DNA of 64,000 bases from Octopus sinensis (lineage: Eukaryota): NCBI RefSeq assembly GCF_006345805.1, contig NC_042997.1, forward strand, positions 197,594,001 to 197,658,000, read 5' to 3'. Of this stretch, positions 2,373 through 56,342 are shown in pieces. The notes under the pieces were generated by a model that made no database searches, had not been told where the DNA came from, and saw only the letters and a program-made list of their open reading frames with translations. How positions within the stretch are numbered: the stretch's first letter is position 1; every line of letters begins with the position of its first letter. Position numbers and translations under genes: made by a program.

Positions 2373-2482
2373 TTTTTTATCCATGTCGTTCAAATTTAAC
2401 TTATCACAGAAATCAATCAGCCCAGGGAATGGACAGTCCAGTCGGAGATCTTCATGAGAATTATCAGGGTGGGATTCAATAA
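2373..2482 (-). CDS. NAE1: NAE1 coding exon 8 (IIESHPDNSHEDLRLDCPFPGLIDFCDKLNLNDMDKK)
   Basis: IESHPDN..EDLRLD.PFP motif; acceptor tctttcag, donor gtaaat; 110 nt. Confidence 0.97.
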
Positions 2483-2665
2483 CTGAAAGAAAAAAACAAA
2501 ACAAAAAAGCTATAAACTCCAATAATTGTCTTTTGCATTGATACAGGGGTCACGCATTTATAAGTTTAACCCTTTAGTGTTTAAACTGGCCAAATCGGGT
2601 CCAAATATGTTTTATGTTCAAATCCTACAATATCATTCTAAAAATAAACAATCACATCACCAAAT

Positions 2666-2925
2666 CTGTTCAAATCCTACAATCAAACCCAAATATATAT
2701 TATTTACAATTGACGGATATTTGTCCTCAACTTGTTTGTTGTTAACACAACGTTTCGGCTGATATACCCTCCAGCCTTCATCAGGTGTCTTGGGGAAATT
2801 TCAAACCTGGGTTCTCATTCCTAAGGTATTTTTCAATGTTATTATCATTATTATTATTCAAGTCACTGCTTGGAATCGAACTCAGAATCTTGAGGTTAGT
2901 AGCCTGCGCTCTTAACCACTACGTC
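2666..2925 (-). mobile_element. tRNA-headed SINE-like element with hammerhead tail, copy X1
   Basis: Minus strand: box A-like TGACGTAGTGG, box B-like AGTTCGATTCC, (AAT)n linker, then the hammerhead-containing segment. Confidence 0.75.
2744..2790 (-). ncRNA. Minimal type I hammerhead ribozyme motif, copy 1
   Basis: AGACAC-CUGAUGA-A-GGCUG(GAGGGUAUAU)CAGCC-GAAA-CG-UU/GUGUU: full core, 5-bp stem II, palindromic ACGU stem III, 5-bp stem I. Confidence 0.8.
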
Positions 2926-2984
2926 ATGTTTTATGTTCAAATCTTACAATATCATTCTAAAAATAAACAATCACATCACCAAAT

Positions 2985-3167
2985 CTGTTCAAATCCTACA
3001 ATCAGACCCAAATATACATTATTTACATTTGACGGATATTTGCCCTCATCTTGTTTGTTGTTAACACAACGTTTCGGCTGATATACCCTCCAGCCTTCAT
3101 CAGGTGTCTTGGGAAAATTTTGAACCTGGGTTCTCATTCCTAAGCTATTTTTTGATGTTGTTGTTGT

Positions 3168-3199
<32 letters not shown>

Positions 3200-3275
3200 A
3201 TTATTATTCAGGCCATTGCTTGGAATCGAACTCAGAATCTTGGGGTTAGTAGCCCATGCTCTTAACCATGACATC
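2985..3275 (-). mobile_element. tRNA-headed SINE-like element with hammerhead tail, copy X2
   Basis: Same layout as X1 with a longer microsatellite linker. Confidence 0.75.
3063..3109 (-). ncRNA. Minimal type I hammerhead ribozyme motif, copy 2
   Basis: Identical to copy 1, offset by 319 nt. Confidence 0.8.
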
Positions 3276-5162
3276 ATGTTTTATGTTCAAATCCTACAAT
3301 GTCATTCTAAAAATAAACAATCACATCACCAAATTTCAAAGCTTCAAGATAACGTCTGATTAATTCAAAACAAATGTGAATTCAAAAGCCTTACATTTGT
3401 CAGAGTAGTCCAAATGCTAAACGGTTAAGGGATGAAGTTGAGTGACTCAACCCTTTAGTACTTGATTGGTTGCTATTTGTTTTATTGTCTATAGAAAGAT
3501 CGTTGCCAGTGTCACGTAAAAAGCAGCGTTTGTGCATTGGGCTTCATGGAGGCAGTGACATTAAATCAAGTGAGAACTTAGTTGTGGCCGATGCCAGTGT
3601 CGCATAACTGGCCCTTTAAAAACCCCTTTCAATCGTTGGGTGATATGCTGTGCTTGTGAAGACCTGTTGTACTGAGTGAAATTGTTGTCGTGGGCAATGC
3701 CAGTGCCTGCTGGTGGCATGTAAAAAGCACCGTTCATGCATTGGGCCTCATGGAGGCAGTGACAGGTGACCAAGACCCTTGGCAATATACTGTGCTTTAA
3801 AGGCGGCGAGCTGGCAGAAACGTTAGCACGCCGGGCGAAATGCGTAGCCGTATTTCGTCTGCCGTTACGTTCTGAGTTCAAATTCTGCCGAGGTCGACTT
3901 TGCCTTTCATCCTTTTGGGGTTGATAAATTAAGTACCAGTTATGCACCTGGGATCGATATAATCGACTTGATCCATTTGTCTGTCCTCCCTGTGTTTGGC
4001 CCCTTGTGGGTAGTAAAGAAATGTCCTTGTTTGTCCTCTCAGTGTTTGGCCCCTTGTGGGTAGTAAGGAAATAGATATACTGTGCTTGTGTTGACCTGTG
4101 AAGCCAAGTGAGACCGTAGTTGTGGCACTCACTATACTCTTGGAGTGGTTGGCATTAGGACAGGCATCCAACCGTAGAGGCCTTGCCAAATCAGATCAGA
4201 ACCTGGTGCAGCCCTCACACCCCAGCTTACTAGTTTCCAGTCAAGCTATCCAACTCATGCCAGCATGGTGAGCGGATGTTAAACGACAATGACGATGATG
4301 TTAGGCTAAGTTTACCTGAGTGGAGTTTGAGCAAACAACATGAGGTTATTTAACTAAAAACCAGAAAAGTATTTGGCTTGGCCCTACACTGTTTCTTCTA
4401 CTGACTGACACAACAACAGCCATCCAAGAATTTGGACCTGGAGATCTCCATTTCCAGCAACTTTGAGGATCACCTCCCAGGTGTCAGGCGTCAATGAAGA
4501 GCCCTCGACTACAAGATGACCAAAGTTTTTTTTTTCCAAGGGATGGGGTCTCCTGCCCCTAAGCCCTAGACCATCACCTAATCACCCTTACTCGTCTTGT
4601 TGCTTAACAAGAACAACAACAGCAGCAATTTCAAACACACAAGCCCCCAGATTGAAGGCTAGGGGCTAAATGAATTTAATAATCCACACCTCTCACCAGC
4701 ATTACATTCATACTAATTTTACGAACCAAGGGAGGGAAGAAAATTAAAGTGAAGCCCAGTGCAGAACTCACTGGTTGTAGGCATATCTGTGTCGTTAAGA
4801 AGTTTGGTTTCTAAACACATGGTTTCAAGTTCAATATCACTGCACAGCACTTTGGGTGTCTTCTATTATAATAAGGGATTCATCTGAGCCTTGTGAGTGG
4901 ACTTAGAAAAAAATTAATAGAAAACTCTCATAAAAAATGTATGTGTGTGTTTCAGTCACCTTGGCAATAAAATGCCTCAAGACTTCTGTCCAGTGCTTAA
5001 TCAAATCTACCTGGGGCCATGTGGAAGACATTTGCCCAAAGTACCAAGCGGTGGGACTGAACCTGAGACCACATGGTTGGGAAGCAAGCTTCTTAACCAC
5101 ACAGCTACACCTGCTCCTAAGAATAGAAATAATAGGACAACGATGAAAATAAATATAATTAC

Positions 5163-5272
5163 TTGTGTGATCTGCCGCAACAATCCGAGCATAACCTATA
5201 AAGCCGTAGGACCGACAGATTAAGAGGGGGATATCAGCTTCTCGGAGGTTAGCCGCAAGCTGCAAGAGTGGC
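5163..5272 (-). CDS. NAE1: NAE1 coding exon 7 (PLLQLAANLREADIPLLICRSYGFIGYARIVAADHT)
   Basis: IPLLICRxYG motif; acceptor ttttacag, donor gtaatt; 110 nt. Confidence 0.96.
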
Positions 5273-13169: not shown

Positions 13170-14544
13170 CTGAATAAAATAAAACAACAAAAAATGTAGA
13201 AAAAACAGAAATAAAATACATATACAAAAAATACATAACCCCCACCTGTCTCAGTAGCAACATTTCCCATGAAGAATATATTTATATCCAAAAGATACAC
13301 TCCACTACAAAGACAGAATGGTGCTATTTACAAAGACAGGGATTGGTAAAGTGGTTAATATTGATCCCTAGCAATTTATGTAGCTATCCAATGGGTCAAT
13401 AAATACCTAAAATGGCTTTGAGCGGCTGTGTGGTAAGTAGCTTGCTTACCAACCACATGGTTCCGGGTTCAGTCTCCCTGCGTGGCACCTTGGGCAAGTG
13501 TCTTCTACTATAGCCTCGGGCCGATTAAAGCCTTGTGAGTGGATTTGGTAGACAGAAACTGAAAGAAGCCTGTTTACCCATGCCAGCATGGAAAGAGGAC
13601 GTTAACCGATGCTGATGATGATATATTTGTGTGTGTGTTTGTCCTCTCCAACATCGCTTGACAACCGATGCTGGTGTGTTTACGTCCCCATAACTTAGCG
13701 GTTCGGCAAAAGAGACCGATAGAACAAGTACTAGGCTTACAAAGAATAAGTCCTGGGGTCAATTTGCTCGACTAAAGGCATGCTCCAGCATGTTATGGGA
13801 AGTAAATGAAAACAGCAAGAGGTGTGAACTTAGTAAATATGAATATGGTAAACTAATTACAACACAAATTATATTGTTGATAGCTTGACTTTTGGGCACA
13901 GATACAAACAGTTTAGTAAGCAAGCCCTTGTATAAAAACGATAAACGTTGCCCTTTTCAAGCCTAGCCAGGTTCATGGGCCCGGTTTCCGTGGCATATAT
14001 GTTCCCCCCAGCTGAACAGGATGCCAGTCCATCGCAGCGTTACTCAAGAAACAAGAAGAGAGAGTGAGAGAAAGTTGTGGTGAAAGAGTACAACAGGGGT
14101 CACCACTACCCCCTGCCGGAGCCTCGTGGAGCTTTTAGGTGTTTTCGCTCAGTAAACACACACAACGTCTGGTCTGGGAATCGAAACCATGATCTTCCAA
14201 CCAGGAGTCCGCTGCCCTAACCACTGGGCCATTGCGCCTCCACAAACCCATATATACACATGCAAAACACATAGACATGCACACACACACACAGATCATC
14301 ATCATTTAGTATTTGCTTTCCATGCTGGCATGGGTTGGACGGCTGTGCAGGTGTGGTTGTGTGGTAAGAAGGCTGACTAAAGCCTTGTGAGTGGATTTGG
14401 TAGATGGAAACTGAAAGAAGCCTGTTGTATATGTGTGTGTTAGTTGCAAATGAATGTCACTGTCACGCAATTGGTGTCCTTCGTTTTCAATCTTTCATGA
14501 AAGCATGTCTGGTCTTGGGGAATAATACCTTACTTGGAAACAGG

Positions 14545-18464: not shown

Positions 18465-19030
18465 ACAATGTGTCCTGGTCTCTTTTGATCTATTAGTAGA
18501 TATTGGAACTTCGTGGTCTAACAATAAATTTGATATTATTTATTATAAACGAGATGAAAAAGAGTCAAGACTATTGAAAAGGTTGCAAGATGCAACGAAA
18601 ATTTTAGGAAAATAAAAATTAGAAATAAGTGGAAATTTTACCGGTGCGTGTGTTAAATTATAAGGAACAAAAAAGAAAATGACTCTCCCCAGATACAACA
18701 AAATATGCTTCAACACACGAACTCATATAAAGAATCTTGCAAACCAAATCCCAAAACGAAAGAAAATATAACTTGTTGAGAAAGTGCGATAGTACAGGAT
18801 TCAAGGGAGATAATTAAAATGTTGACACTAGTTATTTCCCTTGCACTAAAAACTGTTCTATTAGTTCAGAGCAACGTTAACACATTGAATGCAGTCAGCG
18901 AAAAATTTGGCAACTATGGTAGCGAAAAGGCTATTTATAAGTAATATTTCTTGAATGTTTTTTTGATAAAAAGGACACATCTTCCTATAATATTTGCATT
19001 GAGTTTTCCTTTCTCAAAAGAGATAAACAT

Positions 19031-22824: not shown

Positions 22825-23210
22825 GGAAAGCACTCCGTCGGTTACGACGATGAGGGTTCCGGTTGATCCAAATCAACGGAACAGCCTGCTCGTGAAGTTA
22901 ACGTGCAAGTGGCTGAGCACTCCACAGACACGTGTACCCTTAACGTAGTTCTCGGGGATATTCAGCGTGACACAGAGAGTGACAACGTCGGCCCTTTGAA
23001 ATACAGGTACAACAGAAACAGGAAGTAAGTGTGAGAGAAAGTTGTGGTGAAAGAGTACAGCAGGGATCACCACCATCCCCTGCCAGAGCCTCGTGGAGGT
23101 TTTAGGTGTTTTCGCTCAATAAACACTCACAACGCCCGGTCTGGGAATCGAAACCACGATCCTATGACCGCGAGTCCGCTGCCCTAACCACTGGGCCATT
23201 GCGCCTCCAC
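22825..23210 (-). mobile_element. Full-length tRNA-derived SINE (386 bp) with 13-bp TSD
   Basis: TSD gcgcctgaatcat at 22812-22824 and 23211-23223; box A TGGCCCAGTGG, box B GGTTTCGATTCCC; related copies near 13955-14243 and 41560-42237. Confidence 0.92.
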
Positions 23211-40486: not shown

Positions 40487-41290
40487 TTGGGTTCTCATGA
40501 AATCTCAGTTGATCTGATTAACGGAACAGTTTGCTCGTGAAATTGACATGCAAGTGGCTGAGTACTCCACGGGCGCACGTACCTTTAAGGCAGTTACCAA
40601 GGAGATTAACCATGACGCAAAATGTGAAGAAGTTGGCACTTCGATTAACAGGTACAGTTCATTTTTACCAGCTGGAGCAACGTGGAATAAAGTACCTTGT
40701 TCAAGGACATAACACGTCGTCGGGAATCGAACTGACGACCTTACGACCGTGAGCCGAATATCTTAACCACTAAGCCAATGCACCTTCAGTGACAGCAACA
40801 TCAACAACAATAACACGACCAAAAATATCAACGCGAACAACATCGACAACGTCGACGATAATAGCATCAACATCAACATCATCGACAACAAACATCAAAA
40901 ACACCACCACCACTGAAACCACCGCCACTTCCATCTCCACCACCAAGACTACCACCAAAACCACCACCACCATCATTATCACCACTACCAACAACAATAA
41001 GAACATCAACACCATCACTAGCAGCAGCAGCACCACCACCATCACCAAAATCATCACCAGCATCAGCACCACTACCGCCGCCGCCATCACCACTACCGCC
41101 GCCGCCATCACCACAACCACCACCACCACCACCACCACCACCACCACTACCTAACATAACTACCAACATAACATTCATCCTAAACCAGGACTGCCATGTT
41201 ATGTTGGCAAAAATCTTTACTCCAATAATAACATTAGCATAAATAATTCAATATGGAAGACAAGATATTACTGAGATCGCCAAGCTACTC

Positions 41291-41329
41291 CAGACTGAAG
41301 AAGGGCAACTACCTTGAAACTAGTCTCTG
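41291..41329 (+). ncRNA. Minimal type I hammerhead motif of a different family
   Basis: CAGA-CUGAAGA-AGGG(CAACUA)CCUU-GAAA-CUAG-UC/UCUG; palindromic ACUAGU stem III, GUC cleavage triplet. Confidence 0.65.
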
Positions 41330-41713: not shown

Positions 41714-42086
41714 GTTAGTTAGTTAGTTAGTTAGTTAATTTGGCTCAAAAGCAAATAGCAAGGCCATGTAGGGGGACATGGAGTTAAGTACAGGGTGGTG
41801 TTCATGTAAAGAGTTCAGGCCACTTGAGGTCAAGGGAGGCTTTGAACAAAGCGGTCGTCAGCATCTTCACTATCTCGTCTGGCAGCTTGTTCCATGGATC
41901 CGCAACCCGGACGGAGAAAGCTCCTCTCCTTCGATTGAGATGAAATCGTCGCAGGTAGAGCTTTTCGGAATGACCCCGCAGCCGACGCTCTGGAGCAGGA
42001 GTGAAGAACAGCTCTTTCGAGAGGTTACACTTTCCGCTTATGATGTTGTGGGCGAGAATGAGATCACCACGGCGGCGGCGTTTTTC
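41714..42086 (-). mobile_element. CR1-type LINE 3' end with (TAAC)n tail, nested in a tRNA-SINE
   Basis: RRRRGDLILAH...RVADPWNKLP; host SINE resumes at gggtcgccaccac. Confidence 0.9.
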
Positions 42087-42716
42087 TAGAGGGTCGCCAC
42101 CACCCTCTGCCGGATCATCGTGGAGCTTTAGATGTTTTCGCTCAATAAACACACACAACGCCCGGTCTGTGAATCGAAACCGCGATCCTCCGATCCCGAG
42201 TCCGCTGCCCTAACCACTGGACCATTGCGCCTCCACACACAAACACATACACATACAAATTTCTACAAGACATTGCCATTGAATACAGAAGTGTTGTGGT
42301 GTGGAGCGGGGAAGAAGCAGCGAAGTGGAATGGCGATTGTTTTGTTTGAGATGCTCTGAGGTCGGACAATGACAAAAACAAAAACTGACAATAAAAAAAC
42401 AAAAGAACAAAAACAATTACTCCCCCCTCCCTCCACCAAAACATCTTGTTATGAATGGCTGAAACGATTTAATAAAAATGACAATGGAAGAGTAAGAGGG
42501 AGGGGCATATAGAGAAAAAAAAACAAAACATACATTGAGTGACGTCACATTGTTTTTGGCAGAGCCAAAAAAAAAAAGAAAAAAACACAAACGCACAAAA
42601 TGACAAAGAATAGGAAAAAAAACCCCAAAAACTCCAAAAAACGTATCAACAAATAAACGAAAATAAAAATATAACAAGTGAAAAGCAAAAAGCAAAAGGA
42701 GGATTGTTTAGGAATT

Positions 42717-47476: not shown

Positions 47477-47515
47477 TATACATACATATATACATACATA
47501 CATAGGCGCAGGAGT

Positions 47516-48114
47516 GATTCGACGGTCATTCGGAATGCTCACAGCAGCCATATTCCTACCACTCTATGTCACGCTGGTGAGACCCATACTGGAGTATGGG
47601 ATTCAAGCCTCTTCTCCTTATCTCCTCAAATACATACAGCATCTCGAAAGAGTCCAGAAGCTGGCTACCCGCATGGTTCATGGTCTCAAAAATTTGTCCT
47701 ACGAAGAAAGGCTGAAGACGCTCGACCTTTATTCTCTTGAAAAACGCCGCCGCCGTGGTGATCTCATTCTCGCCCACAACATCATAAGCGGAAAGTGTAA
47801 CCTCTCGAAAGAGCTGTTCTTCACTCCTGCTCCAGAGCGTCGGCTGCAGGGTCATTCCGAAAAGCTCTACCTGCGACGATTTCATCTCAATCGAAGGAGA
47901 GGAGCTTTCTCCGTCCGGGTTGCGGATCCGTGGAACAAGCTGCCAGACGAGATGGTGAAGATACCGACGATCGCTTTGTTCAAAGCCTCCCTGGACCTCA
48001 AGTGGCCTGAACTCTTTACATGAACACCACCCTGTACTTAACTCCATGTCCCCCTACATGGCCTTGCTATTTGCTTTTGAGCCAAATTAACTAACTAACT
48101 AACTAACTAACTAA
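47516..48114 (+). mobile_element. CR1-type LINE 3' fragment (left arm of the inverted duplication)
   Basis: LYVTLVRPILEY...LERVQKLATR...SYEERL; (TAAC)n tail. Confidence 0.92.
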
Positions 48115-54834: not shown

Positions 54835-56342
54835 TTAGTTAGTTAGTTAGTTAGTTAGTTAATTTGGCTCAAAAGCAATAGCAAGGCCATGTAGGGGGAC
54901 ATGGAGTTTAGTACAGGGTGGTGTTCATGTAAAGAGTTCAGGCCACTTGAGGTCCAGGGAGGCTTTGAACAAAGCGATCGTCGGTATCTTCACCATCTCG
55001 TCTGGCAGCTTGTTCCACGGATCCGCAACCCGGACGGAGAAAGCTCCTCTCCTTCGATTGAGATGAAATCATCGCAGGTAGAGCTTTTCGGAATGACCCT
55101 GCAGCCGACGCTCTGGAGCAGGAGTGAAGAACAGCTCTTTCGAGAGGTCACTTTCCGCTTATGATGTTGTGGGCGAGAATGAGATCACCACGGCGGCGGC
55201 GTTTTTTCAAGAGAATAAAGGTCGAGCGTCCTCAGCCTTTCTTCGTAGGACAAATTTTTGAGACCATGAACCATGCGGGTAGCCAGCTTCTGGACTCTTT
55301 CGAGATGATGTATGTATTTGAGGAGATAAGGAGAAGAGGCTTGAATCCCATACTCCAGTATGGGTCTCACCAGCGTGACATAGAGTGGTAGGAATATGGC
55401 TGCTGTGAGCATTCCGAATGACCGTCGAATCAAGAACAGAATTCCGCGTGCTTTGTTGGCTGCATGGACGCACTGGGCCGAAGGCGAAAAGGAGGAATCC
55501 ACCAAGATACCCAGGTCCTTTACCTGATCGGTCCTCTCCAGCAGCAGACGACCCGGCTCGAAATCAAGTTGAGTTGCACGAGTAGAGCCGACAGGCAGAT
55601 GACAGCACTTTGACACGTTCAGACACAGGTCCCAATCGTTAGACCACTTCCAAATTTGGTGGAGGCATCGACGAAGATCCTCTATATTACCGCGAGGAGC
55701 GACCAGTTTGATATCGTCGGCAAATAGAAGGGTGTGTTGCGTGAGGTCGTCGGGTAAGTCATTTATGAAGACTAAGACAACAAGGGCCCCGCACTGAACC
55801 TTGAGGCACGCCACTGCTCACACTGGAGACGTCGCACCGCGAACCATTAACTGGACTTGGAAGGAGCGATCTGAGAGGAAGGCACCAACCCATCGTATAA
55901 TATCCGATGGAAACTATATGCTTGAAGCTTGACAAGTAATAGGCGGTGGTTTACCGAGTCAAAAGCTTTGGCAAAGTCCAATAAAACGATGTCAACACAT
56001 CACTATCATCGAGGATGCGCGTCACCAATTCTTCCATTACTAGTAAGTTGGTCAAGCATGATCTCTTCGGCACGAAGCCGTGTTGGGAATCAGAGATAGA
56101 GGCTGTGTTTAGGAGGTGAGCATCATACTTTTCTTAAGGATGGTTTCGAACATCTTGCTGATTATTGATGTAAGGGAAACCGGTCGGTAGTTAAGCGGGT
56201 CTTCGCGGCTCCCTTTCTTGAAAATTGGGCAGATTATCGCTGTTCTCCAGTCTGCAGGTATAACACCCGTCGCCAATGACATATTGAATAGTCGTGTTAA
56301 GGGCTCGCAGATGACCGGAGCCAACGCTTTGATAACCCGTGG
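54835..56342 (-). mobile_element. CR1-type LINE, longest copy (1.5 kb, degraded RT)
   Basis: PIFKKGSREDPLNYRPVSLTSI, LLDFAKAFDSV, LLFADDIKL, KDLGILVD motifs with frameshifts. Confidence 0.93.

What the first reader, a model, noticed from the sequence alone, without database searches (positions are those of the whole stretch)
2744..3109. Two identical hammerheads 319 nt apart in the sense strand of NAE1 intron 7
Seen: both motifs read in the NAE1 transcription direction, the nearer one about 260 nt upstream of the exon 8 acceptor. They are identical over 47 nt although flanking parts of the repeats differ. Inference: tandem copies let the palindromic ACGU stems pair in cis. Double cleavage would sever the pre-mRNA and release a 319-nt monomer able to circularise, in competition with splicing of a conserved housekeeping gene.
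Basis: inference. Interest (0 to 1): 0.7.

Follow-up and report, generated by a model that had tools for sequence, protein, structure and literature searches.

The report
Intronic retroelement repeat with minimal hammerheads
Two identical helix-III-less hammerhead ribozyme motifs do sit 319 nt apart in the sense strand of an NAE1 intron. They belong to a short tandem insertion of a SINE-like, Penelope-type "retrozyme" repeat, a known kind of selfish element that probably has little effect on the host gene.

Summary
On the minus strand, which is the NAE1 sense strand, two identical motifs lie at 3108..3063 and 2789..2744: GACAC-CUGAUGA-A-GGCUGG(loop)UCAGCC-GAAA-CG-U-U|GUGUU. Predicted cuts fall at 3068|3067 and 2749|2748, 319 nt apart, and the nearer cut is about 265 nt from the acceptor at 2483. 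A minimal-hammerhead descriptor hit only these two sites in 64 kb and none in 200 shuffles. Rfam hammerhead models miss them because helix III is only the palindrome ACGU.

[quoted passage not shown] This class is active only as dimers.

The motifs sit in a 2.2-unit tandem array (3342..2608) with units of 350 and 319 nt and 35% GC. Each unit also carries a tRNA-derived box A/box B module, an (AAT)n run and a T5 run, as in the Schistosoma SMalpha SINE. An 11-nt direct repeat flanks the insertion.

Splicing competition is unlikely: ribozymes of this class are slow, the acceptor is close, and helix I competes with a local hairpin. This is a new member of a known kind, of low to moderate interest. 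No relatives could be retrieved, so copy number, covariation and activity remain untested.

The parts
3063..3108 (-). Upstream minimal hammerhead. Helix I 5' strand GACAC 3108..3104; CUGAUGA 3103..3097; extra A 3096; helix II GGCUGG 3095..3090 / UCAGCC 3081..3076 with loop AGGGUAUA; GAAA 3075..3072; C15.2 3071; G16.2 3070; U16.1 3069; U17 3068 | G1.1 3067; helix I 3' strand GUGUU 3067..3063.
2744..2789 (-). Downstream minimal hammerhead, identical to the upstream copy. CUGAUGA 2784..2778; extra A 2777; helix II 2776..2771 / 2762..2757; GAAA 2756..2753; CG 2752..2751; U 2750; U17 2749 | G 2748; GUGUU 2748..2744.
2749..3067 (-). The 319-nt monomer that double cleavage would release (5'-OH G3067 to 2',3'-cyclic-phosphate U2749). 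GC 35%. Circular MFE -64.2 kcal/mol, z = -1.45, 59% paired.
2608..3342 (-). Tandem array of 2.2 units: a 5'-truncated unit 3342..3277 (66 nt), unit 1 3276..2927 (350 nt) and unit 2 2926..2608 (319 nt). Units are 93.7% identical over 252 gap-free nt and differ mainly in (AAT)n length.
2872..2926 (-). tRNA-derived module of unit 2: box A TGACGTAGTGG (2926..2916), a 33-nt spacer, box B AGTTCGATTCC (2882..2872). It has the same spacing as, and aligns with, three tRNA-like SINE heads elsewhere in the window.
   Evidence: ARAGORN finds it only at 80% threshold. The Rfam tRNA model does not hit.
3222..3276 (-). The same module in unit 1. Box B is intact (3232..3222); box A is degenerate (TGATGTCATGG).
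2640..2644 (-). T5 run (Pol III terminator-like), one per unit, about 33 nt before the next box A. Equivalent runs lie at 2963..2959 and 3313..3309.
3169..3208 (-). (AAT)n microsatellite between the tRNA-like module and the hammerhead in unit 1. The shorter run in unit 2 is at 2858..2847. This accounts for the 350 vs 319 nt unit lengths.
3449..3459 (-). 5' copy of the 11-nt direct repeat (ACTAAAGGGTT on the minus strand), a candidate target-site duplication.
   Evidence: only two copies in the window, 0.05 expected.
2568..2578 (-). 3' copy of the same 11-nt direct repeat. Together the two copies bracket an 870-bp insertion (3448..2579): a 108-nt leader, the array and a 29-nt tail.
2483..5162 (-). 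Host intron of NAE1 (2680 nt). Flanking exons are 5272..5163 (...ICRSYGFIGYARIVAADHT) and 2482..2373 (IIESHPDNSHEDLRLD...DMDKK).

Best explanation
The two motifs are the ribozymes of a non-autonomous retroelement that inserted, in sense orientation, into an NAE1 intron as a 2.2-unit head-to-tail array. Each unit of about 320 nt reads: tRNA-derived box A/box B module, (AAT)n, Penelope-type minimal type I hammerhead, about 100 nt, T5 run. In layout it resembles both a metazoan non-LTR retrozyme and the Schistosoma SMalpha SINE. A single hammerhead cannot fold because helix III is only A15.1-C-G-U16.1. When two copies are on one RNA, as in the NAE1 pre-mRNA or the excised intron, or when two RNAs meet, the ACGU palindromes can pair into a 4-bp shared helix III and form a double hammerhead. 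[quoted passage not shown] This chemistry serves the element's own life cycle. For NAE1 the insertion is most likely neutral, and any cleavage is slow and happens mainly after the intron has been defined or removed. Shown here: the sequence anatomy, the statistics, the host gene and strand, and the tandem structure. Inferred: dimeric folding, cleavage, circularisation, retrotransposition as the origin, and neutrality for the host.
For: All conserved core nucleotides are present, with a 6-bp helix II and a 5-bp helix I. These are the only two descriptor hits in 64 kb, with 0 in 200 shuffles. [quoted passage not shown] The array has units of 319 and 350 nt and 35% GC, within the published 170-400 nt, under-50% GC range for animal retrozymes. 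The array has a 5'-truncated first unit and a complete 3' end, and an 11-nt direct repeat unique to the two flanks. This fits target-primed reverse transcription of a multimeric RNA. Box A and box B match consensus with at most one mismatch each and a 33-nt spacer, with 0 hits in 40 shuffles, and the module is homologous to other SINE heads in the window. One T5 run lies in each unit. This parallels the SMalpha layout described in PMC6765202. The sense strand of the insertion carries no AATAAA/ATTAAA signal and no strong splice-site consensus. On kinetics, min-HHRs are slow even as dimers, slow intronic ribozymes do not affect splicing, and only about 265 nt lie between the cut and the acceptor.
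Against: No second copy of the unit is present in the window. None was found in the metagenome or viral collections. Family status, copy number and helix covariation are therefore untested. No Penelope-like ORF is nearby; the only RT hit is a degraded, sub-threshold RVT_1 fragment more than 50 kb away. Rfam hammerhead models give no hit even at E<=10 on a 76-nt query. In thermodynamic folding helix II is well supported (0.69-0.91), but helix I is not (0.03-0.04), because its 3' strand forms the hairpin GUUGU-GUUA-ACAAC. Forcing helices I and II in both copies costs +4.3 kcal/mol. The 319-nt circle is not strongly self-paired (z = -1.45), unlike described retrozyme circRNAs. The candidate TSD also encloses a 108-nt leader unrelated to the unit.
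Confidence: 0.7

Rival explanations
1. Inert relic. The array is a decaying repeat whose hammerhead motifs are intact in sequence but never cleave appreciably in vivo. Nothing is released or circularised from this locus.
For: The class has very low in vitro activity. Helix I is out-competed by a local hairpin, and helix III is only 4 bp across a 319-nt distance. Units have diverged by 6.3% and box A of unit 1 is degenerate, so the insertion is not young. The circle has a weak fold.
Against: Both 46-nt motifs are free of any substitution while the units differ at 16 of 252 positions (P about 0.03). Dimeric cleavage has been shown for this class (Lunse et al. 2017, cited but not read). Animal retrozyme RNAs accumulate to high levels in all species tested.
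Confidence: 0.22
2. The ribozyme pair cuts the NAE1 pre-mRNA co-transcriptionally, competes with splicing and thereby tunes expression of the gene, as proposed for the CPEB3 intronic ribozyme.
For: The motifs are in sense orientation in an expressed housekeeping gene, and the two ribozymes are intact and identical. There is precedent: the CPEB3 ribozyme modulates its host mRNA.
Against: The effect requires a fast ribozyme or a long downstream intron. Here the downstream distance is about 265 nt and the class is slow. The motifs lie inside an obvious mobile-element insertion. Intronic retrozyme copies are common, at 42-44% of copies in Xenopus. No match to the conserved intronic hammerhead families HH9 or HH10 was found.
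Confidence: 0.05
3. Chance resemblance to a hammerhead within an AT-rich tandem repeat of no RNA-level significance.
For: There is no Rfam hit. The two copies count as one event because they arose by duplication.
Against: The strict descriptor gives 0 hits in 200 shuffled windows. The motif also shows features not required by the core: the extra nucleotide at 9/10.1, G10.1-C11.1, palindromic 15.2-16.2 and retrozyme-sized tandem spacing.
Confidence: 0.03

Closest known systems
Minimal hammerheads (min-HHR) of Penelope-like elements (Cervera and de la Pena 2014, PMC4209133; Lunse, Weinberg and Breaker 2017)
   Same: Type I topology. No helix III of its own, with a palindromic 15.2-16.2. An unpaired nucleotide between A9 and G10.1, a G10.1-C11.1 pair, a long helix II (6 bp) and a short helix I (5 bp). 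A second copy lies nearby in tandem. The motif is missed by standard hammerhead models.
   Different: No Penelope RT/GIY-YIG ORF flanks the repeats, so they are not demonstrably pLTRs. The unit also carries a tRNA-like module, which is not described for pLTRs.
Metazoan non-LTR retrozymes (Cervera and de la Pena 2020, PMC7229834; Li, Clavereau and Pollet 2026 preprint)
   Same: Head-to-tail repeats of 170-400 nt, each with one type I hammerhead. Low GC, no ORF, no LTR/PBS/PPT. A candidate TSD longer than 4 bp. The predicted product is a monomer of about 320 nt that a tRNA ligase could circularise. Dimer-dependent cleavage, as in the axolotl.
   Different: Described invertebrate retrozymes (coral, mussel) have canonical hammerheads with a real helix III and efficient monomeric cleavage. 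Their circles are highly self-paired, whereas this one has z = -1.45. The 2020 review (PMC7761336) states that retrozymes seem to lack promoters, whereas this unit has box A/box B and a T5 run.
SMalpha / Sjalpha SINE-like retroposons of Schistosoma (Ferbeyre et al. 1998; summarised in PMC6765202)
   Same: A unit of about 330 nt with a Pol III-type internal promoter followed by a hammerhead. The units occur in tandem arrays and as dispersed copies. The ribozyme is thought to cut multimeric transcripts into monomers.
   Different: The host phylum differs: this window is probably from a mollusc, not a flatworm. No sequence comparison was possible. The T5 run in every unit here would stop Pol III before the next unit, so multimeric transcripts would have to come from Pol II read-through, here of NAE1.
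Newt/salamander satellite 2 hammerheads (Epstein and Gall 1987; Forster et al. 1988)
   Same: Tandem units of about 330 nt. Helix III is too weak for monomeric cleavage, and the ribozyme is active as a double hammerhead.
   Different: The newt motifs keep a 1-bp stem plus a tetraloop and the loop 1-loop 2 tertiary contacts. Their arrays are huge satellites, not a 2.2-unit intronic insertion.
Conserved intronic ribozymes (amniote HH9/HH10 hammerheads; the CPEB3 HDV-like ribozyme)
   Same: A self-cleaving motif in the sense strand of an intron of a protein-coding gene.
   Different: Those are single, monomer-competent, evolutionarily conserved motifs. Here there is no Rfam HH9/HH10 match and the motif is embedded in a repeat insertion.

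Membership tests
Hammerhead ribozyme (general) | Conserved core C3 U4 G5 A6 N7 G8 A9 ... G12 A13 A14 A15.1, with U16.1 and H17 at the cleavage site | tested here: met
   CUGAUGA ... GAAA-CG-U-U|G is read directly in both copies.
Hammerhead ribozyme (general) | Three helices around the core | tested here: inconclusive
   Helix II is 6 bp (probability 0.69-0.91). Helix I is 5 bp and possible, but its probability is 0.03-0.04. Helix III cannot form in a monomer (ACGU with no loop). A 4-bp intermolecular helix III is possible by sequence, but it is a pseudoknot that the folding tools cannot score.
Hammerhead ribozyme (general) | Match to the Rfam hammerhead covariance models (Hammerhead_1, _3, _II, HH9, HH10) | tested here: not met
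   No hit at gathering score on the whole window, nor at E<=10 on 1.1 kb or on 76 nt. This is expected for helix-III-less variants.
Hammerhead ribozyme (general) | Site-specific self-cleavage | not testable with these tools
   This needs in vitro transcription of monomer and dimer constructs.
PLE-type minimal hammerhead | Helix III absent or reduced to a short palindrome (15.2-16.2 self-complementary) | tested here: met
   A15.1-C-G-U16.1 = ACGU. The criterion comes from PMC4209133.
PLE-type minimal hammerhead | Extra unpaired nucleotide between A9 and 10.1, and a G10.1-C11.1 pair | tested here: met
   A at 3096 and 2777. G3095-C3076 and G2776-C2757.
PLE-type minimal hammerhead | Longer helix II (6-8 bp) and shorter helix I (4-5 bp) | tested here: met
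   6 bp and 5 bp.
PLE-type minimal hammerhead | A second copy in tandem or nearby, to allow a dimer | tested here: met
   Two copies 319 nt apart on the same strand.
PLE-type minimal hammerhead | Located in the pseudo-LTR of an element encoding RT plus GIY-YIG endonuclease | tested here: not met
   No such ORF lies next to the array. Of 8 long ORFs in the window, only one gives a sub-threshold RVT_1 hit, at 55185-55814. The literature notes that most genomic min-HHRs are solo or truncated.
PLE-type minimal hammerhead | Genome-wide consensus family with compensatory changes in helices I and II | not testable with these tools
   No other copy was retrievable.
Metazoan non-LTR retrozyme | Head-to-tail repeats of about 170-400 nt, each with one type I hammerhead, and GC below 50% | tested here: met
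   Units of 350 and 319 nt, GC 35%.
Metazoan non-LTR retrozyme | No LTR, PBS, PPT or coding capacity | tested here: met
   Only short ORFs of 98 aa or less lie across the array, and none is on record. The array has no terminal repeats other than the units themselves.
Metazoan non-LTR retrozyme | Target-site duplication longer than 4 bp | tested here: inconclusive
   An 11-nt repeat unique to the two flanks is present, but it encloses an extra 108-nt leader and a 29-nt tail. No empty site is available for comparison.
Metazoan non-LTR retrozyme | The monomer folds into a stable, highly self-paired circle | tested here: not met
   Circular MFE is -64.2 kcal/mol, z = -1.45 (21 of 300 shuffles as low), 59% paired.
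Metazoan non-LTR retrozyme | Expressed as linear and circular RNA of unit length | not testable with these tools
   No transcriptome data are available.
SMalpha-type SINE-like hammerhead retroposon | Internal Pol III promoter (box A and box B) in the same unit as the hammerhead | tested here: met
   Unit 2 has TGACGTAGTGG, a 33-nt spacer and AGTTCGATTCC, with at most 1 mismatch each and 0 hits in 40 shuffles. The module is homologous to SINE heads in the window (36/55 identity; spacer 16/33, P = 0.003). Box A of unit 1 is degenerate. Promoter activity was not tested.
SMalpha-type SINE-like hammerhead retroposon | Sequence homology to SMalpha / Sjalpha | not tested
Conserved intronic hammerheads (HH9/HH10) | Match to the family model and conservation in the orthologous intron | tested here: not met
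   No Rfam HH9/HH10 hit. Orthologous introns could not be retrieved.

The most novel reading that the evidence does not exclude
The unit represents an undescribed SINE family, probably from a cephalopod or other mollusc. It fuses a tRNA-type Pol III promoter and terminator with a Penelope-type minimal hammerhead, making a 'self-promoted retrozyme' outside flatworms. That would contradict the general statement that animal retrozymes lack promoters. On this reading the sense-oriented dimer in a constitutively transcribed housekeeping intron acts as a steady source of 319-nt circular RNA, and perhaps as a master copy.
Probability: 0.2. Interest if true: 0.5.

Novelty: new member of a known kind. 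Interest (0 to 1): 0.3.

Why it matters
If the reading is right, this locus is a clean natural example of a dimer-dependent minimal hammerhead pair carried on a Pol II pre-mRNA. It also links three element types that are usually discussed separately: Penelope pLTR ribozymes, non-LTR retrozymes and tRNA-derived SINEs of the SMalpha type. That link is useful for annotating repeats in mollusc genomes and for the open question of who transcribes retrozymes. It does not by itself indicate a new regulatory mechanism for NAE1.

Tried and rejected
1. Rfam at gathering threshold on the whole window, then at E<=10 on 1.1 kb, 76 nt and 111 nt. No hammerhead or tRNA family hit. I take this as a limit of the models for helix-III-less motifs, not as evidence against the motif.

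2. Tandem Repeats Finder did not report the 319/350-nt period. The repeat finder, BLAST and nhmmer did.

3. Relatives were sought with exact or degenerate hammerhead and tRNA-module patterns. The metagenome collection (2 scans) and viral contigs returned nothing. Genome contigs returned only 28 unrelated bacterial hammerheads that share the helix II sequence.

4. A protein route to the organism or orthologous intron failed. The search for homologous proteins with the two-exon NAE1 peptide found no candidate. The look-up of encoding contigs with the 98-aa ORF across the array, and the listing of cluster members with 10 window ORFs, found nothing on record.

5. I tested whether the 108-nt leader or the 29-nt tail is a diverged unit. 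Neither is significantly similar.

6. I looked for a Penelope ORF in the window and found none.

7. [quoted passage not shown] They are cited only through reviews or from memory.

8. MFE and cofold folding of the isolated motif cannot represent the double hammerhead, which is a pseudoknot with a non-canonical core. I used it only for helices I and II.

Full report
**1. What is in the sequence**

Read on the minus strand, both sites carry the same sequence: 5'-GACAC CUGAUGA A GGCUGG AGGGUAUA UCAGCC GAAA C G U U | GUGUU-3'. They lie at 3108..3063 and 2789..2744.

The 36-nt core string occurs exactly twice in the window, both times on the minus strand and 319 nt apart. None is expected by chance.

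In standard hammerhead numbering the parts are:
- C3-A9: CUGAUGA.
- An extra unpaired A.
- Helix II: G10.1...C11.1, 6 bp (5 Watson-Crick plus one G-U), with an 8-nt loop.
- G12 A13 A14 A15.1, then C15.2 G16.2 U16.1 U17.
- Helix I: GUGUU pairing with GACAC (5 bp).

I wrote a descriptor for helix-III-less hammerheads. It requires the core, an optional nucleotide after A9, a G...C-closed helix II of at least 4 bp, GAAA, a palindrome of 0-6 nt, U, H, and a helix I of at least 4 bp. It found only these two sites in 64 kb on both strands, and nothing in 200 dinucleotide shuffles.

**2. Host gene and strand**

The translated exons on either side (5272..5163 and 2482..2373, minus strand) match human NAE1/APPBP1 in the PDB at E=2.5e-19 (1r4m_A residues 137-207). 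A tblastn with a human NAE1 sequence written from memory places further exons at 13174-13064, 12196-12098, 9548-9453, 7461-7372 and 345-274. The start-codon exon (MATTT...YDRQLR) lies near 16.2 kb.

The motifs are therefore in the sense strand of the 2680-nt intron 5162..2483. The nearer cut is about 265 nt from the acceptor. By my count this is the sixth intron from the start-codon exon, so the label 'intron 7' is unverified. This is a minor point.

**3. The motifs are part of a repeat insertion**

- The repeat finder, BLAST, MAFFT and nhmmer show a head-to-tail array at 3342..2608. It consists of a 5'-truncated unit (66 nt), unit 1 (350 nt) and unit 2 (319 nt).
- The units are 93.7% identical over 252 ungapped nt and differ mainly in an (AAT)n run.
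- The mismatch-free stretch around the ribozyme is 64 nt, and there is a second such run of 60 nt elsewhere in the unit.
- With 16 differences placed at random, a 64-nt run somewhere has P about 0.13, and a clean 47-nt motif has P about 0.03. Identity of the two ribozymes is at best weak evidence for constraint at this locus.
- The 11-mer AACCCTTTAGT (plus strand) occurs only twice in the window, at 2568-2578 and 3449-3459, against 0.05 expected. It brackets an 870-bp segment made of a 108-nt leader, the array and a 29-nt tail.
- Neither the leader nor the tail is recognisably related to the unit.

A 5'-truncated first unit, a complete 3' end and a flanking direct repeat are the usual signature of target-primed reverse transcription. 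I treat the TSD as a candidate only.

**4. A tRNA-derived module in each unit**

- Unit 2 carries TGACGTAGTGG (box A consensus TRGCNNAGTGG, 1 mismatch). After 33 nt it carries AGTTCGATTCC (box B consensus GGTTCGANNCC, 1 mismatch).
- The same test finds three other sites in the window, all with a 33-nt spacer, and none in 40 shuffles.
- The module aligns with those SINE heads: 36/55 identity overall and 16/33 in the spacer alone (P = 0.003).
- It is not a foldable tRNA. ARAGORN reports it only at 80% threshold, and the Rfam tRNA model does not hit.
- In unit 1 box A has decayed.
- Each unit also has one T5 run on the sense strand, about 33 nt before the next box A.

The unit therefore reads box A - box B - (AAT)n - hammerhead - about 100 nt - T5. 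That is the layout of a Pol III-transcribed SINE. A Pol III transcript would contain only one ribozyme. Two ribozymes on one RNA require read-through by Pol II, which the NAE1 pre-mRNA provides.

**5. Which known class**

Cervera and de la Pena (2014, PMC4209133) defined 'min-HHRs' in the pseudo-LTRs of Penelope-like elements, and also found them dispersed in metazoan genomes. Their features are:
- no helix III, or only a short palindrome;
- a G10.1-C11.1 pair;
- a palindromic 15.2-16.2;
- a longer helix II and a shorter helix I;
- activity only when two copies form a double hammerhead, and low activity in vitro.

The review PMC6765202 repeats this and cites Lunse et al. 2017 for dimeric cleavage. 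Every sequence-level criterion is met here.

Animal non-LTR retrozymes are tandem repeats of 170-400 nt with one type I hammerhead and low GC. [quoted passage not shown] A 2026 preprint argues that they derive from Penelope pLTRs, and reports that 42-44% of Xenopus copies are intronic, although depleted relative to intergenic DNA. Schistosoma SMalpha elements combine a Pol III promoter with a hammerhead in tandem units of about 335 nt.

The present unit sits at the intersection of these three descriptions. Points of difference:
- No RT/GIY-YIG ORF is nearby.
- The circle is not strongly self-paired (z = -1.45, 59% paired).
- Rfam hammerhead models do not recognise it.
- The retrozyme review states that retrozymes seem to lack promoters.

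**6. How it most likely works, and what is inferred**

*Shown:* the anatomy above.

*Inferred:* two copies pair their ACGU palindromes into a shared 4-bp helix III. [quoted passage not shown] A tRNA ligase may circularise this RNA.

Thermodynamic folding of a 550-nt context supports helix II (0.69-0.91) but not helix I (0.03-0.04). The reason is that the 3' strand of helix I forms the hairpin GUUGU-GUUA-ACAAC. Enforcing helices I and II in both copies costs +4.3 kcal/mol. The double hammerhead is a pseudoknot and cannot be scored with these tools. This argues for slow or conditional cleavage.

**7. Effect on NAE1**

Work summarised in PMC10919898 shows that only fast intronic ribozymes reduce splicing and that slow ones have no effect. 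The CPEB3 ribozyme is thought to matter because its half-life of 2-3 min matches the roughly 10 kb left to transcribe. Here only about 265 nt remain before the acceptor, and the ribozyme class is slow.

The insertion brings no AATAAA/ATTAAA signal and no strong splice consensus on the sense strand. The candidate TSD lies 85 nt upstream of the acceptor, outside the usual branch-point zone.

I therefore rate regulatory competition with splicing as unlikely (about 0.05). A neutral insertion, whose ribozymes may at most process the intron RNA, is the best reading.

**8. Organism and age (weak)**

A SINE just downstream of the exon ending at 5163 matches, from my memory, the abundant octopus tRNA-derived SINE. 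No tool confirmed the source organism.

If the window is from an octopod, Penelope-like elements and SINEs are abundant and recently active there (PMC13282606). With that paper's scale (JC distance 0.065 is about 18 My), the 6.3% unit-to-unit divergence would put the insertion at roughly 9 My, provided the units were identical at insertion.

**9. Limits**

No relatives of the unit could be fetched. Copy number, family consensus, helix covariation, presence in orthologous introns and expression are all untested. The verdict rests on sequence anatomy, chance statistics and published class definitions.

**10. Verdict**

This is a new member of a known kind: a Penelope-type minimal hammerhead in a retrozyme/SMalpha-like tandem SINE. 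Interest is about 0.3.

Noticed in passing
window 41291-41329 (+), 18571-18607 (+), around 24611 (-): A relaxed min-hammerhead descriptor finds three further single candidates, against 0.07 expected per shuffled window. The candidate at 41291 reads CAGA-CUGAAGA-AGGG..CCUU-GAAA-CUAG-U-C|UCUG, with a palindromic CUAG. The other two use the U3/A8 core variant reported for Schistosoma Cercyon PLEs. This suggests the genome is littered with Penelope-type hammerhead relics.
   Followed up: partly
window 40777..40723, 23198..23144, 14231..14177 (minus strand): Three tRNA-like SINE heads have box A and box B at exactly the same 33-nt spacing as in the hammerhead unit. ARAGORN calls 40784..40710 tRNA-Val(CAC)-like at 90% threshold.
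   Followed up: partly
window 5115..4950 (minus strand): A tRNA-derived SINE (GGTGTAGCTGTGTGGTTAAGAAGCTTGCTTCCCAACC...) lies immediately after the donor of the exon ending at 5163. From memory it resembles the abundant octopus SINE, which hints that the window comes from an octopod. No tool verified this.
   Followed up: no
window 2682..2667 and 2630..2615 (and the same positions in the other units): Each unit contains the 16-mer TTGTAGGATTTGAACA twice, 52 nt apart, which points to an internal partial duplication. The array ends right after the second copy plus TAAAACA.
   Followed up: no
window 2937..2927 and 2840..2829 (minus strand): The tRNA-like module plus (AAT)n is flanked by AACATAAAACA and AACATTGAAAAA. 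These may be the TSD of a mini-SINE that entered the ancestral hammerhead unit. This is speculative.
   Followed up: no
window 3399..3369 (minus strand): The 108-nt leader between the candidate TSD and the array contains an 8-bp hairpin, ACAAATGT-N15-ACATTTGT, followed by a T4 run. Its significance is unknown.
   Followed up: no
window 3977-4072: A 50-nt tandem repeat (1.9 copies, 91% identity) lies in the same intron, within a block of other SINE-like repeats (3500-4300).
   Followed up: no
window 55185-55814 (-), 47514-48023 (+), 41802-42158 (-): Degraded retrotransposon ORFs. The first gives a sub-threshold RVT_1 hit. The other two share a nearly identical C-terminal peptide (..LAHNIISGKCNLSKELFFTPAPERRL..). 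They are probably LINE fragments, and no GIY-YIG domain was seen.
   Followed up: partly
loci L001-L028 (bacterial genome contigs): 28 bacterial contigs (Clostridia, Paenibacillus, cyanobacteria) match CTGATGANGGCTG-N6-14-CAGCCGAAAC. They are presumably bacterial hammerheads that share the same helix II sequence, and are unrelated to this locus.
   Followed up: no
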